From Diplonema japonicum (Eukaryota; Protista; Euglenozoa: Diplonemea), in contig OZ025653.1 of NCBI GenBank assembly GCA_964019335.1, positions 682,001 to 746,000 of the forward strand: a DNA stretch of 64,000 bases, read 5' to 3'. A program made the position numbers and the translations under genes. Shown in pieces: positions 263-4,933 of this stretch. Below the pieces are notes generated by a model. The model was not told the DNA's origin and made no database searches. It was given only the letters and a program-made list of their open reading frames with translations. The stretch's first letter is position 1; each line of letters begins with the position of its first letter.

Positions 263-3145
263 TTAGATCTTAGGGTCGAAGAAGGCCATGTCTTTAACGG
301 GCGACCTCTTCACAACCTTTGCTGGAATGCCTGCCACTGTGCAGTATGGGTCAACAGCCTTGTTCACGACAGCGGAGGCGGCCACGACACACCCGTTCCC
401 AATCTTGATGTTGCCCAACACCTGGCAGTGCGCCCCGAGGATTACTTCGTCTCCGATTTTGGGATGCCTATCGCCGCCTACCTTCCCAGTGGCACCCAAT
501 GTAATGTCATGCAAGAATTGCACGTTCCGCCCTACCACAGCCGTGCTGCCAATGACCAGCCCTGTCCCGTGGTCCACGGTGATGCCTTTCCCTATCGTTG
601 CCTGCGGGTGGATGTCAACAGCGTAGGCGGCAGAACAGCATGACTGGAACAGCAGTGCCAGCCACTCGTTCCCCTCCTTCCACAACGCGTTGGCTATCCT
701 GTGACAGGTGGTGGCGTGGTGCCCTTTGTAGAACAGAAACTGTGTGACGTATTTGAAGTCCGAAGCAGCAAGTGCTGCATCTATGACACTGTAGCGGTAG
801 CAGTCGACGGCTATCTCCTCCAGCACTACGGGGTTGCGCTGCAGGCATTGAGCTGCGAGTCTCGTTAAGTCCACACCCTTCACATTGCTGAGTGCAGGGC
901 CTAGTGAGTCCGCCACAGCGAAGGCCATGTTCGGCTGGTGGAGGATTCTGCTGTTAAAAAACCCTTGCAGCTCAGGCGACTGGCGTGCTGCCAACTGCGC
1001 CTCCTGCAACAGTGACTTCCACACGATGTCCGCGGTGGGGTCCAGCGATTCATCGTGAGCACCGATGTGGGTCACGGGCAGATTCTTGCAGTCCTCTTGT
1101 AAATGGCCAAACACATCCTCCGACAGGTACCTGTCACCGTAGTCGGTGACCAATGTGACGATTAGCTTGTTGCCGTTCTCAGGTCGCCTTGCTAATATCT
1201 TGGCACCCGCCACCAGTGCACCTGCAGATACACCTGCAAAGATACCCTCCTCGGCAGGGAGCCTGAGGGTCATCTCGTTGGCCTCCGCTTGTGTGACGGT
1301 GATGATCTCGTTGATGAAGGACTCGTCGATCCAAGACGATGCCTCGTGCGTGTCGATCATCTTCCCGTCGCGGAAGACGGGGTTCGCAGCAGACTGCACA
1401 GCGACAACCTTACAAGCACCGTTGCTCTTTTCCTTGAAGTACCTTCCGAGGCCTGCAAGCGTGGCACCGCTTTCAATGGGCACCACCACGTAGTCCGCCA
1501 TCCCGCGTGTCATCTCTGTGATCTCAGGGCCGGTGGTTTCATAGTGCACGTGGCATGCCGACTGGTTCTCCAGCTGGTTGAGGAACAGCGCCTTGCGTCC
1601 CGGGGTAGCGTTGATCTGCTGTGCTTGGTGCATGGCAAGGTAGCTGGCACCTGTCTTGCCTCTGGAGGCAGGGGTGAGGTGCAGTTCTGCGCCGTACGCC
1701 CTGATGCAGACACGCTTCTCGATGGACTCTGTCTCAGGCATGAAGAGGATAAGCTTGTACCCCTTCGACGCGCAGATCATGGCAAGCGACGTCCCTATGT
1801 TCCCTGTGGTCGCCTCCACGATGGTGACGCTGCGGTCCAGCAACCCTGCATGCTCCGCATCGCTGAGCATCGCTAGGGCTGCACGGTCGGAGCTGGACTT
1901 CCCTGGGTTTTCGCACTCCATCTTCAGGGCAATCCGCGCAGGTTGCCCCCTAGAGATCTTGTTAAGGTAGATCATGGGTGTCTTGCCAATGCAGGAACGA
2001 AGAGTTTTGTTCTCAAGCCCCGAAAGATAAGCGCCGTGGATAGGGATCCTTGTGGGCGCTGGTATGTCGAAGTCACTTGGCAAGTCCGAGTTAGGGATGA
2101 CAGGCATGTTTTCGGAGTTCTTTTTCAATTCGGAGTAAAGGGCAGTGCTGAGGTACCTCTCGCCTTGCGAGGGAATGACGGCCACGATCTGCTTATCCTT
2201 GTAGGCGGGTTGCGAGGCGAGCGCGATCGCTGCATGCACTATGGCTCCTGCGGAGACACCGCAGAGAAGGCCTTCTTCACATGCGAGGCGGCGGGCCATC
2301 TCGAGCGCCTGTTTGGAATTGACCATCATGACTCTGTCAAGGTTGTTGACGTTGAGGACCTCCGGAACAAAGCCTGCCCCGATGCCTTGGATGGAGTGCG
2401 GCTCGGGTTTGTAGTTCTGACCGTTCTTGTGCTTGGTGAGGGCGGGGCTTTCTGATGGTTCGACACCGACGATCTCGACCTTAGTTTTTGTGGTTTTGAA
2501 GTAGGAGGCAACGCCGTTGGTGGTGCCGCCAGTGCCCACGCCCATTACAAAGACATCGATGTCGCCATTGGTCTGGCGGTGGATCTCAGGGCCGGTGGTC
2601 AGTTCATGAATCGCAGAGTTGGCAGGGGACGCGAACTGCTGTGTGAGATACGCTGTGTGGCCTGTCTTGGAAGTTGATTTGTTGATGTCTGCAACGATTT
2701 CCTCTGCCTTCGCTTTGGCACCTTGGATGCCCTTGTCACTCGGTGTCAGCACCACCTGAGCTCCGAAGATAACCAAGTTAAGCCGTCTTTCCAGCGACAT
2801 CGTCTCAGGCATTGTGAGGATAACCCGGTAGCCCCTTGCTGCCCCAAGCATGGCCAGTGCGATCCCTGTGTTCCCACTTGTTGCCTCCACCAATGTGCTG
2901 TGCCCAGGTCGAATTGCTCCTTTTGTCTCCGCCTCTCGTATCAACGCAAGGCCGAGTCTGTCCTTCACTGATTTGCCTGGGTTCATGTATTCCAGCTTCA
3001 CCGTGACTTTGCCCAATAAACCTTTCCCCACGTTATCTAGCTTCACCATCGGGGTGTTGCCTATCATCGATACGATGTCTCTTCCGATCCCTTCATTCAC
3101 TGTGCCCTTAAGGTGGGTCTGTAGGACCTCAATCCTTTTGGACAT
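263..3145 (-). CDS. cysK-cysK-cysE: Tri-domain fusion: cysteine synthase (CysK/OAS-TL) + degenerate CysK-like domain + serine O-acetyltransferase (CysE/SAT), N-terminal PTS2; 960 aa
   Basis: Domain 1 has IGNTPMVKL, KLEYMNPGKSVKDR (PLP Lys), EATSGNTG, QQF, GVGTGGT, PHSIQGIGAG and GERYLST. Domain 2 repeats the fold with NPGKSSSDR. Domain 3 has FYKGHHA, VDIHPQATIGKGITVDHGTGLVIG, TLGATGK-GDRHPKIG and VAGIPAKVV. Start is set at MSKRIEV (ATG 3145) after an A-run; the ORF track's longer N-terminus is homopolymer-derived. Confidence 0.95.
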   Translation of the reverse strand: MSKRIEVLQTHLKGTVNEGIGRDIVSMIGNTPMVKLDNVGKGLLGKVTVKLEYMNPGKSVKDRLGLALIREAETKGAIRPGHSTLVEATSGNTGIALAMLGAARGYRVILTMPETMSLERRLNLVIFGAQVVLTPSDKGIQGAKAKAEEIVADINKSTSKTGHTAYLTQQFASPANSAIHELTTGPEIHRQTNGDIDVFVMGVGTGGTTNGVASYFKTTKTKVEIVGVEPSESPALTKHKNGQNYKPEPHSIQGIGAGFVPEVLNVNNLDRVMMVNSKQALEMARRLACEEGLLCGVSAGAIVHAAIALASQPAYKDKQIVAVIPSQGERYLSTALYSELKKNSENMPVIPNSDLPSDFDIPAPTRIPIHGAYLSGLENKTLRSCIGKTPMIYLNKISRGQPARIALKMECENPGKSSSDRAALAMLSDAEHAGLLDRSVTIVEATTGNIGTSLAMICASKGYKLILFMPETESIEKRVCIRAYGAELHLTPASRGKTGASYLAMHQAQQINATPGRKALFLNQLENQSACHVHYETTGPEITEMTRGMADYVVVPIESGATLAGLGRYFKEKSNGACKVVAVQSAANPVFRDGKMIDTHEASSWIDESFINEIITVTQAEANEMTLRLPAEEGIFAGVSAGALVAGAKILARRPENGNKLIVTLVTDYGDRYLSEDVFGHLQEDCKNLPVTHIGAHDESLDPTADIVWKSLLQEAQLAARQSPELQGFFNSRILHQPNMAFAVADSLGPALSNVKGVDLTRLAAQCLQRNPVVLEEIAVDCYRYSVIDAALAASDFKYVTQFLFYKGHHATTCHRIANALWKEGNEWLALLFQSCCSAAYAVDIHPQATIGKGITVDHGTGLVIGSTAVVGRNVQFLHDITLGATGKVGGDRHPKIGDEVILGAHCQVLGNIKIGNGCVVAASAVVNKAVDPYCTVAGIPAKVVKRSPVKDMAFFDPKI

Positions 3146-3506
3146 TTTGGTTTTTTTTTTTTTTTTTTTTTTTTTTTCTTTTTTTTTCCCCTCTTTTCGT
3201 TGTCCGCTGTTATGTATGTATGTGAGGAGCAGGAGGTGAATTAGATATAGAGCGGGGAGGCAAAACAAAAAAGGTAGCATTTCCTAGGGGTTCGTCTTTC
3301 TTTTTTTTTATTATTCCTTCTTTTTTTTTTATTGCCACGTTTTATTCCCTTCCCGGTTGGTTTTTCCGGGAAAAGGGGGCAAAAAAAAAGGGGGGAGTTT
3401 TGCCGTTTTCTTTTTTTTTAAATAAAAACCAGTTCAGAGTGCGGTGTGGACAAAAAAAAGGGGGGGGGGATGTAACAACGCAAAAAAAAAGAAAAACACA
3501 ATGAAC

Positions 3507-4647
3507 TCACAGCTTCGAGGCGGCACGCGGGATGCCAGCGAATTGGAGCGCCACCTCCGTGTTTATGAGGATTTGCTCATCTGTTTTCTTTTACCCCCCC
3601 CCCCTCTTTTTCCCATAAAAACATACCAAACACCGACGCCTTGCTTGATCCAGCGTTCCCTTGCAGATATCGTGCGTAAACACCGTGCGAAATGGCAGCA
3701 TTTCTCCAGGAGTTCAGAACTTCGAAGAAAGTCCAGTCTTCACGGGATAGAGGCGGCCTTTGGACATGGCGAGTGTAAAGATCCAAGAGGTGTTGCTTAG
3801 ATGGCGTGCCATGCGGGGGGTTGCCTCGCAGGCCCCTCTCCGGGTTTTTAGCAAACGGGATTTCCATGGCAGAGGTGCACCACGTGAGGTCCACCGCAGG
3901 GTGGCCGAGGGTGCAGATCTCCCAATCAAGCACAGCGACTACCTTTGGCAGTGTAGGGTGGATGATGAGGTTGCCGATTCTGAAGTCGCCGTGAACGATG
4001 GACGTTGGCTCGGCAGTGGTCGGGGTGTGTGTTTGCAGCCATTTTGTTAAGTTCACCATATCATTCGGATTGTACCGCGCACCCATGCCTTTCTGTACTA
4101 TGGCGTCACCCATTGTCACCTGCCTGGACCAGGTCTTGATTTGTCTTTCAGCATGTCCACCAATTTTGGACAATCCTGACAATCCAACTTTTCGGAAATC
4201 AATTTTATGTAGTTCTGCCAGGACGCGAATGGTATCATCCCACAAGGCAGACCGTTCATCCGGTGTGAACCCTGGAAGCTGCTCGCTCGTTAAGATCCTC
4301 CCTTCCACGTAGTCCATTACGTAAAATGTTTGCCCGCACACGCTGTGGTCCTCACACAAGAAATGCACCCTTGGAACGGGTACTTTACTCTCCTTCAGAG
4401 CTTCCATGACCTTGTACTCCCTCTCGACCTGGTGTGCGGAAGGAAGGAGTTTGCCGGGGGGCTTCTTCCTCAAGACGTACTTCCTCTCGTCCCCTTCAAA
4501 CACGAACAGATATGTTGGGTTGCTCATCCCGTTGTTGAATTGTCGCACGCTCGCCTTCCCGGACGGGAACCCCTGTATTTTTTCCCGCATCACGCGTACC
4601 ACTGCATCGGTGTCTATGGGCTGCCGTACTGCAATGGTGCCAGACAT
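3507..4647 (-). CDS. Aminoglycoside-phosphotransferase-fold kinase (ACAD10/11 N-terminal-like, stand-alone) with C-terminal PTS1 SKL; 1 intron
   Basis: Motifs QFNNGMSNPTY, YVLRKKPPGKLLPSAHQVEREY, FYVMDYVEGR, IVHGDFRIGN and VLDWE. GT-AG intron 3581-3626 (46 nt) gives a last exon DEQILINTEVALQFAGIPRAASKL*. Confidence 0.88.
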
Positions 4648-4933
4648 TTCTTTTTTTTTTTTTCCTCCGCCTTTTTTATGATTTTTTTTTTCTTGTCCAA
4701 TATGAAAAAGAATAGCAGGTAAATGAGCATGGGAAAGACATTGATAGAAACACAACTCAAAAAAGGAATTTCTTTTTTTTTTTCTTTCCTTCTTTTTTGG
4801 CTCGAAACAATTTCCTCCTCAACCCCCCTTAACAACCCTTGGATGGACTCCTCAACTCTTCACCTTATCGTTATGGTACACAAACGTAAGAAAAAAAAAT
4901 AGAAAAATAAACAAAACGGAACAAAAAAAAAAG

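What the first reader, a model, noticed from the sequence alone, without database searches (positions are those of the whole stretch)
263..3145. Single-chain cysteine synthase complex: CysK(active)-CysK(dead)-CysE
Seen: one intronless ORF encodes both steps of de novo cysteine synthesis plus a second, degenerate CysK copy. Known: CysE (trimer/hexamer) and CysK (obligate dimer) are normally separate proteins. They associate reversibly, the CysE C-terminal Ile plugging and inhibiting the CysK active site until O-acetylserine displaces it. Inference: tandem CysK domains would form an intramolecular pseudo-dimer with one active site, so the oligomer is a permanent complex whose regulation cannot rely on dissociation. 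I recall two-domain SAT/OAS-TL fusions in some protists but not this three-domain form; novelty is unverified.
Basis: partly seen in the sequence, partly recalled or inferred. Interest (0 to 1): 0.9.

Follow-up and report, generated by a model that had tools for sequence, protein, structure and literature searches.

The report
Fused cysteine-synthesis enzyme of diplonemids
One uninterrupted gene of a diplonemid protist joins a working cysteine synthase, a catalytically dead copy of it and the genome's only serine acetyltransferase into one protein; this layout is conserved across diplonemids, probably sent to the peroxisome-like glycosome, and described in no paper I could find.

Summary
Window 263-3145 (minus strand) is one 960-aa ORF with the domain order CysK, CysK-like, SATase_N/hexapeptide SAT.

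- **Domain 1** has every CysK catalytic motif and passes the NCBIfam cysK cut-off.
- **Domain 2** has lost the PLP lysine (Ser419), the PLP-phosphate loop and the IQGIGAGF loop. It is still far better conserved than the linkers.
- **The SAT domain** keeps its catalytic residues and a C-terminal ...FDPKI tail. It is the only SAT in this 62.5-Mb genome.

Seven diplonemid species carry the same three-domain protein. In Hemistasiidae both CysK domains are intact; in Diplonemidae domain 2 is dead, apparently from a single event. A scan of 1.84 billion representative proteins found the architecture nowhere else, and no searched paper describes it.

AlphaFold2 models domains 1-2 as one rigid body (pTM 0.92). 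I could not inspect the geometry.

The N-terminus (MSKRIEVLQTHL) closely matches the PTS2 of this organism's own aldolases, which suggests glycosomal import.

The pseudo-dimer, the tail gating and the localisation are inferences. I class it as a new variant of a known kind. Earlier scan notes cover this same stretch only, not other DNA.

The parts
263..3145 (-). Complete CDS of 960 aa plus stop (263-265) for the CysK / pseudo-CysK / SAT fusion protein
   Evidence: ORF list. Collinear full-length alignment to 6 diplonemid orthologs. Single contigs with 0 differences in three runs.
3110..3136 (-). PTS2-like nonapeptide RIEVLQTHL (aa 4-12), a candidate glycosomal import signal
   Evidence: Fits the PTS2 regexes quoted in PMC10874023 and PMC9512073. 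Conserved in 4 of 7 orthologs. The same genome's two aldolases start MSGRIEVMKSHL and MSARLEVMKSHL.
2102..3088 (-). Domain 1 (aa 20-348): catalytically intact O-acetylserine sulfhydrylase (CysK/OASTL). The Schiff-base Lys61 is at 2963-2965.
   Evidence: cysK HMM gives 383.7 bits against a cut-off of 350.95. About 51% identical to Arabidopsis OASTL 1z7w, aligned through K46. All motifs intact. Foldseek TM 0.90-0.97 to solved CysKs.
2015..2101 (-). Linker between domains 1 and 2 (aa 349-377): poorly conserved in sequence but modelled as ordered
   Evidence: 8-32% identity between species in aa 341-377 (54% within Flectonema pair, 47% between hemistasiids). pLDDT 79-96.
1076..2014 (-). Domain 2 (aa 378-690): CysK-derived pseudoenzyme. 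Ser419 (1889-1891) replaces the PLP lysine; the phosphate loop and the IQGIGAGF loop are lost.
   Evidence: cysK HMM gives 260 bits, below the cut-off. Motif table. Of 74 columns invariant in the live domains, 17 are lost in all dead copies and 32 are kept. 35-51% identical between species (79% within Flectonema pair), against 8-32% for the linkers in the same comparisons.
1025..1075 (-). Flexible tether between domain 2 and the SAT domain (aa 691-707)
   Evidence: pLDDT below 50 at residues 696-700. 6-38% identity between species (92% within Flectonema pair).
296..1024 (-). Domain 3 (aa 708-950): full-length bacterial-type serine O-acetyltransferase (SATase_N plus left-handed beta-helix)
   Evidence: Pfam. 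Aligns to E. coli CysE 1t3d at E 7e-52 with VDIHP, DHxTG and GDRHPK conserved. It is the only SATase_N/cysE hit in the genome.
266..295 (-). C-terminal tail KDMAFFDPKI ending in Ile960: the candidate plug for a CysK pocket. It also fits the loose PTS1 regex.
   Evidence: 6 of 7 orthologs end [FY]DxxI, against 28 of 120 nearest free SATs ending in Ile. pLDDT below 50 in the monomer model.
3146..3197 (-). A-rich tract directly upstream of the ATG: 5' leader, not coding
   Evidence: Sequence. Orthologs start at the ATG. The reads tool masked this tract as a repeat.

Best explanation
This is a real, conserved diplonemid gene for a three-domain cysteine-synthesis protein.

Shown from sequence:
- The SAT domain has the residues needed to make O-acetylserine from serine and acetyl-CoA. 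It is the only SAT in the genome.
- Domain 1 is a complete PLP-dependent O-acetylserine sulfhydrylase, able to add sulfide to make cysteine.
- Domain 2 is a CysK copy that lost its PLP-binding lysine and phosphate loop. It stays under selection and has its own newly fixed residues.

Shown from the comparison of species:
- The two CysK domains arose by duplication within the diplonemid lineage.
- The fusion to SAT predates the split of Hemistasiidae (both CysK domains live) from Diplonemidae (domain 2 dead, one clade).

Inferred:
- Domains 1 and 2 pack as a fixed intramolecular pair that stands in for the obligate CysK homodimer.
- The SAT domains trimerise or hexamerise on a flexible tether, giving a permanent complex with one live CysK site per SAT chain.
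- The conserved C-terminal Ile tail still gates a CysK-type pocket reversibly. I favour the live domain 1 pocket (my odds about 45%) over the dead domain 2 pocket (about 20%).
- An N-terminal PTS2 sends the protein to glycosomes (about 60%).
For: - Architecture and motifs.
- Domain 1 is above the cysK equivalog cut-off and domain 2 is below it.
- It is the sole SAT. The genome also holds a NIR_SIR-domain (sulfite/nitrite reductase-type) gene and ATP sulfurylase genes.
- There are seven full-length orthologs; the six from other species come from two genome records and four transcriptomes flagged as complete ORFs.
- All diplonemid CysK domains form one clade (100/96). The dead domain 2 copies form one clade (100/100) on a long stem of 0.78.
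- The SAT domains are monophyletic and lie apart from the prokaryote-type fusions.
- Domain 2 is 35-51% identical between species (79% within Flectonema pair), against 8-32% for the D1-D2 linker in the same comparisons.
- All five dead copies share derived residues: G202P, S326D and E329D.
- AlphaFold2 gives pTM 0.82 for the full length and 0.92 for residues 1-700, with an ordered linker.
- The tail is conserved.
- The PTS2 closely matches this genome's aldolase PTS2.
- One contig spans the ORF in three runs. Run X7 also carries a spliced contig of the neighbouring gene, so it behaves as RNA.
- 8 of 9 listed strain differences in the SAT region are synonymous.
Against: - No enzyme activity, oligomer state, PLP stoichiometry or localisation has been measured.
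- The tail is not docked anywhere in the monomer model (pLDDT below 50).
- The SAT domain falls below the NCBIfam equivalog cut-offs (177 against 210.65; 204 against 397).
- The PTS2 motif is absent from the Flectonema and Lacrimia orthologs.
- The runs are contigs of unrecorded library type, so transcript ends and RNA status for this gene are indirect.
- No kinetoplastid or euglenid CysK was in the tree, so the duplication is not dated more precisely.
Confidence: 0.72

Rival explanations
1. Decoy dock. The dead domain 2 keeps a remnant carboxylate-binding pocket and acts as the built-in receptor for the SAT C-terminal tail. The live domain 1 is then never inhibited, and the tail/domain 2 contact serves only to stabilise or regulate SAT.
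For: Gln524 is invariant and the Asn loop is partly kept (xxG[ND]x) in all dead copies. The NPxK..DR flanks of the lost lysine are also invariant. Newly fixed residues indicate a new selected role. The tail is conserved.
Against: The third Asn-loop Thr is replaced by bulky Ile, Leu or Phe, and the PLP that lines the pocket in solved CysK-peptide complexes should be missing. AlphaFold2 does not dock the tail. Hemistasiid orthologs keep the same tail with two live domains, so the tail does not need a dead pocket.
Confidence: 0.2
2. The polyprotein is cleaved after translation or import into separate CysK-CysK and SAT proteins, which then behave as an ordinary dissociable complex.
For: The tether between domain 2 and SAT is disordered and poorly conserved. 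Two-domain CysK-CysK proteins without SAT exist in Hemistasia and Artemidia.
Against: No cleavage motif is known here. The fusion has been kept intact in seven species since the Hemistasiidae/Diplonemidae split. No stand-alone diplonemid SAT appeared in the 5.8-billion-protein search.
Confidence: 0.06
3. Domain 1 mainly carries out another beta-replacement reaction (cyanoalanine, S-sulfocysteine or similar), so the fusion is not chiefly a cysteine synthase.
For: CysK-family members switch substrates with few changes. Foldseek hits include beta-cyanoalanine synthase and S-methylcysteine synthase at similar TM-scores.
Against: Domain 1 passes the cysK equivalog cut-off. Being fused to the enzyme that makes O-acetylserine, the substrate of cysteine synthesis, argues for that reaction. 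The best sequence matches are bona fide OASTLs.
Confidence: 0.07
4. The gene is an assembly or gene-model artefact that joins neighbouring genes.
For: None found.
Against: The reading frame is continuous. Contigs in three independent runs are identical. The same architecture occurs in six other species, four of them from de novo transcriptomes.
Confidence: 0.01

Closest known systems
Bacterial and plant cysteine synthase complex (CysE/SAT hexamer plus CysK/OASTL dimers, non-covalent)
   Same: It has the same two enzyme families and the same two reactions. The SAT tail ends in Ile, as in the tail that plugs the CysK active site. The SAT is full-length with the SATase_N domain that builds the hexamer.
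   Different: Here the partners are covalently joined, at a fixed ratio of two CysK-type domains (one live) per SAT chain. In the classical complex, two dimers bind one hexamer reversibly.
Diplonema (Paradiplonema) papillatum KAJ9440351.1, annotated 'Cysteine synthase 3' (P0002)
   Same: It is the ortholog: 58-60% identical over the full length, with the same three domains, a dead domain 2 (Lys to Ala), the -DPKI tail and a PTS2-like RLNVLLSHL.
   Different: It comes from a different species and a much larger genome. Its database name hides both the SAT domain and the pseudo-domain, and I found no paper that discusses it.
Hemistasiid three-domain orthologs (Artemidia motanka P0003, Namystynia karyoxenos P0004)
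   Same: Same domain order, same tail, same PTS2-like N-terminus.
   Different: Both CysK domains keep the lysine, TSGNT, G[ST]GGT and IQGxGAGF motifs. This is the likely ancestral, doubly active state.
Prokaryote-type two-domain CysK-SAT and SAT-CysK fusions from metagenomes and MAGs (for example P0027, P0030, P0031)
   Same: CysK and a hexapeptide SAT sit in one chain, and some end in Ile.
   Different: They have one CysK domain only, and short SATs lacking most of SATase_N. Both their CysK and SAT parts fall outside the diplonemid clades, so these are independent fusions.
Tandem CysK-CysK proteins of chytrid fungi, the nematode Aphelenchoides, and Hemistasia/Artemidia (P0023, P0026, P0017, P0008, P0009)
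   Same: An obligate homodimer has been turned into a single chain with two CysK domains.
   Different: They carry no SAT. Each lineage duplicated on its own.

Membership tests
CysK / O-acetylserine sulfhydrylase (NCBIfam TIGR01139), domain 1 | Score above the curated equivalog cut-off | tested here: met
   383.7 bits against a cut-off of 350.95 for C6:684135-685070.
CysK / O-acetylserine sulfhydrylase, domain 1 | PLP Schiff-base lysine, Asn loop TSGNT, substrate Gln, PLP-phosphate loop GTGGT | tested here: met
   K61, TSGNT 89-93, Q170 and GTGGT 204-208 are present. K61 aligns with K46 of Arabidopsis OASTL 1z7w.
CysK / O-acetylserine sulfhydrylase, domain 2 | Score above the curated equivalog cut-off | tested here: not met
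   260.2 bits against a cut-off of 350.95.
CysK / O-acetylserine sulfhydrylase, domain 2 | PLP Schiff-base lysine and PLP-phosphate loop | tested here: not met
   Ser419 replaces the lysine, ESGAT replaces GTGGT, and the IQGIGAGF loop is gone. The fold is retained (pLDDT above 90). It is a member by descent but not by function.
Serine O-acetyltransferase CysE (SATase_N plus hexapeptide left-handed beta-helix) | SATase_N and Hexapep domains above the Pfam cut-offs | tested here: met
   PF06426 at 44.8 bits (cut-off 21); PF00132 at 40.6 bits (cut-off 27).
Serine O-acetyltransferase CysE | Catalytic Asp/His and substrate Arg-His motifs (E. coli D143, H158, R192-H193; numbering from my own knowledge) | tested here: met
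   VDIHP, VDHGTG and GDRHPK align column for column with E. coli CysE 1t3d.
Serine O-acetyltransferase CysE | NCBIfam equivalog cut-off (TIGR01172, PRK11132) | tested here: not met
   177.1 against 210.65 and 204 against 397. This is a divergent eukaryotic domain, so I file it as SAT on domain and residue evidence, not as an equivalog.
Cysteine synthase complex | SAT C-terminus ends in Ile, which inserts into the CysK active site | tested here: inconclusive
   A terminal Ile is present and conserved in 6 of 7 orthologs. Insertion is not shown, and the tail is undocked in the monomer model.
Cysteine synthase complex | Reversible association controlled by O-acetylserine and sulfide | not testable with these tools
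   Needs biochemistry.
PTS2-targeted glycosomal/peroxisomal proteins | N-terminal [RK][LVI]x5[HQ][ILA(F)] within about 20 residues of Met1 | tested here: met
   RIEVLQTHL lies at aa 4-12. The regexes are those quoted in PMC10874023 and PMC9512073. It closely matches this genome's aldolase N-termini.
PTS2-targeted glycosomal/peroxisomal proteins | Motif conserved in orthologs, and localisation shown | tested here: inconclusive
   The motif is present in 4 of 7 orthologs. The held supplement text of the P. papillatum subcellular proteome had no hit for the protein's name.

The most novel reading that the evidence does not exclude
Diplonemids make cysteine inside glycosomes with a covalently locked cysteine synthase complex. 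In it, a dead CysK domain has become the built-in partner, and possibly the receptor for the SAT tail, of a live one. Control would then come from an intramolecular plug rather than from assembly and disassembly. The Hemistasiidae-to-Diplonemidae series would record the step from enzyme to pseudoenzyme.
Probability: 0.15. Interest if true: 0.8.

Novelty: new variant of a known kind. Interest (0 to 1): 0.6.

Why it matters
The cysteine synthase complex is a textbook case of metabolic control through reversible protein association. It is also a drug and herbicide target.

A natural single-chain version fixes the ratio of the partners and removes chain dissociation as a control step. It therefore offers a direct test of what the SAT tail/CysK contact does. 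It may also be a stable particle for structural work on a complex that has been hard to resolve.

The live/live form in hemistasiids and the live/dead form in diplonemids give a dated natural experiment in how one half of a homodimer becomes a pseudoenzyme.

If the PTS2 is functional, cysteine synthesis joins the pathways moved into euglenozoan glycosomes.

Diplonemids are among the most abundant marine heterotrophs, so their sulfur assimilation has ecological weight.

Tried and rejected
- **Longer ORF to 3280.** Rejected: it reads through a poly(A) tract.
- **Assembly chimera.** Rejected.
- **Inheritance from a prokaryote-type CysK-SAT fusion.** Rejected by both trees.
- **Patatin hit at aa 635-674.** It scores below the Pfam cut-off, so I ignored it.
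- **Transcript ends, spliced leader and poly(A) site.** These could not be read. All runs are Logan contigs, and the flanking A-tracts were masked.
- **RNA status of the runs.** It is only indirect. Runs X7 and X1 carry a spliced contig of the neighbouring gene. X3 and X5 carry the unspliced form and may be DNA.
- **Foldseek against the PDB.** It returned only single-domain CysK chains and cannot test the two-domain geometry. Model coordinates and PAE were not available.
- **Literature.** Seven searches and nine papers or supplements turned up no description of the fusion. Butenko et al. 2020 (PMC7052976) list SAT and CS as separate enzymes. The held supplement text of the P. papillatum subcellular proteome (PMC12697944) had no hit for the protein name.
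Not confirmed. The two-domain fusions I found group with bacterial sequences.
Full report
**What is there.** The minus strand carries one ORF from 263 to 3280. The first 45 codons read through a long A-tract, and every ortholog starts at the later Met. The CDS is therefore 263-3145, or 960 aa. Pfam finds PALP at 27-325, a second PALP at about 380-670, SATase_N at 708-812 and Hexapep at 894-929. NCBIfam names cysK and serine O-acetyltransferase. The two PALP domains are 34% identical to each other.

**The three domains.**
- Domain 1 aligns over its full length with Arabidopsis OASTL 1z7w at about 51% identity. Lys61 sits on the Schiff-base Lys46, and the TSGNT, Gln and GTGGT motifs are intact. 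On its own it scores 383.7 bits against the cysK equivalog model, whose cut-off is 350.95.
- Domain 2 scores 260 bits, below that cut-off. It has Ser419 in place of the lysine, ESGAT in place of GTGGT, TTGNI in place of TSGNT, and no IQGIGAGF loop.
- Domain 3 aligns with E. coli CysE 1t3d at E 7e-52 from the SATase_N helices to the end of the beta-helix. VDIHP, DHxTG and GDRHPK are conserved. It ends ...AFFDPKI.

**Is it real and expressed?** Contigs from three public runs in three studies each cover 54/59-3139 with no differences. The ends of those contigs fall in masked A-tracts. Runs X7 and X1 also contain a contig that skips a 46-nt GT..AG intron in the neighbouring gene, so they behave as RNA. 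X3 and X5 may be DNA. Better evidence for a single transcript comes from other species. De novo transcriptomes of Artemidia motanka, Namystynia karyoxenos, Flectonema neradi and Lacrimia lanifica each hold a complete ORF of 974-1015 aa with the same architecture. So do the D. papillatum genome (KAJ9440351.1, 'Cysteine synthase 3') and an ENA genome contig. In a related strain (run X1), 8 of the 9 listed differences in the SAT region are synonymous.

**Place in this genome.** The assembly is 62.5 Mb. SATase_N and cysE models hit only this gene, so it is the sole SAT. At least three stand-alone CysK genes exist as well (C74, C10, C53). A NIR_SIR-domain (sulfite/nitrite reductase-type) gene and ATP sulfurylase genes are present, so sulfide from sulfate assimilation is plausible.

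**Evolution.**
- In a careful IQ-TREE run of 56 CysK domains, all diplonemid domains plus two stand-alone paralogs of this genome form one clade (100/96). The two domains therefore come from a duplication inside this lineage, not from two unrelated CysKs.
- Domain 2 of Artemidia and Namystynia keeps every catalytic motif.
- The five dead domain 2 copies form one clade (100/100) on a stem of 0.78, against 0.29 for the matching domain 1 stem. They carry different residues at the lysine position (S, A, T, T, L). This fits one loss followed by drift at that site.
- Of 74 columns invariant in the 13 live domains, the dead copies lose 17 in all five. These include the Lys, two Asn-loop residues, the phosphate-loop glycines and the IQGIGAGF loop. 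They keep 32, including Gln524 and the NPxK..DR flanks. They also share new residues (G202P, S326D, E329D).
- Domain 2 is 35-51% identical between species (79% within Flectonema pair). In the same comparisons domain 1 is 52-66%, domain 3 is 59-70% and the linkers are 6-38%. Domain 2 is thus a selected pseudoenzyme, not debris.
- The SAT domains are monophyletic, sit among long bacterial-type CysEs, and show roughly the same species order as domain 1. The nearest free SATs are bacterial at 42-46% identity. No free diplonemid SAT turned up.

**Distribution.** HMMER against 1.84 billion representative proteins found full three-domain matches only in the diplonemid clusters. The one other long candidate, P0360, is a tandem SAT. 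Two-domain CysK-SAT or SAT-CysK fusions do occur in metagenomes and MAGs, but both of their parts fall outside the diplonemid clades. Tandem CysK-CysK chains have arisen independently in chytrids, a nematode and hemistasiids.

**Structure.** AlphaFold2 gives mean pLDDT 92.2 and pTM 0.82 for the full chain, and pTM 0.92 for residues 1-700. The linker between domains 1 and 2 is ordered. The tether from domain 2 to SAT (696-700) and the last ten residues fall below pLDDT 50. A pTM of 0.92 for two lobes of about 320 residues implies a confidently fixed pair. Foldseek returned only single-domain CysK chains.

**The tail.** Six of seven orthologs end [FY]DxxI and one ends in Leu. Only 28 of the 120 nearest free SATs end in Ile, and some of these share an FDPG[IL] ending. 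The tail is therefore under selection. From established knowledge of the cysteine synthase complex, its expected role is insertion into a CysK pocket. The monomer model does not show which pocket.

**Targeting.** Residues 4-12, RIEVLQTHL, fit the PTS2 patterns used for euglenozoans. The orthologs show RLNVLLSHL, RVEVLKSQL and RVGVIGSHF; the motif is absent from Flectonema and Lacrimia. This genome's two class-I aldolases start MSGRIEVMKSHL and MSARLEVMKSHL. Aldolase is a PTS2-bearing glycosomal enzyme in D. papillatum according to PMC12697944 and PMC9512073. The stand-alone CysKs have no such motif. The C-terminal -PKI also fits the loose PTS1 pattern. I put glycosomal import at about 60%.

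**Literature.** No searched paper describes the fusion. Butenko et al. 2020 score SAT and CS separately.

**Verdict.** The architecture-level reading is right, but the mechanism is still inferred. It is a lineage-wide, undescribed variant of the cysteine synthase system.

Noticed in passing
window 3581-3626 (minus strand), inside the APH-family gene at 3577-4647: This is a 46-nt GT..AG mini-intron. Contigs in runs X7 and X1 skip it, while X3 and X5 keep it. The gene has a Pfam APH phosphotransferase domain.
   Followed up: partly
window 3146-3197, 4648-4680 and 1-45: Long A-tracts on the coding strand sit directly upstream of start codons and downstream of the gene. They make ORF finders add spurious poly-Lys N-termini, and assembly contigs break there.
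   Followed up: partly
window 266-274 (C-terminal -PKI): The last three residues fit the loose PTS1 pattern [SAGCNP][RHKSNQ][LIVFAMY]. So do D. papillatum (-PKI) and Lacrimia (-PQI), but not Flectonema, Artemidia or Namystynia. The tail might serve two purposes.
   Followed up: partly
G000 C10:105083-106087 (L012) and C10:94562-95542 (L013): Two class-I aldolase genes lie about 10 kb apart, both with PTS2 N-termini. The L012 match contains one in-frame TAA.
   Followed up: partly
G000 C53:378071-379041 and C53:323115-324084 (L005, L006): Two identical CysK copies about 55 kb apart, each split into pieces as if by introns. This looks like a segmental duplication.
   Followed up: no
P0008 (Hemistasia phaeocysticola) and P0009 (Artemidia motanka): These are two-domain CysK-CysK proteins with both lysines and no SAT or PTS2. 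Butenko et al. 2020, Table S10, list no SAT for Hemistasia.
   Followed up: partly
P0023, P0026, P0011 (chytrids), P0017 (Aphelenchoides), P0016: Tandem CysK chains, double or in P0011 triple, have arisen independently in other eukaryotes. Some plant examples are probably merged gene models.
   Followed up: partly
P0360 (944 aa, metagenomic): A protein with three SATase_N stretches and a hexapeptide region, that is, tandem SAT units.
   Followed up: no
P0241-P0247 (free bacterial-type SATs): Their C-termini read ...ATFDPGL or ...AFDPGI, much like the diplonemid ...FDPKI tail. This hints that the tail type came in with the SAT.
   Followed up: no
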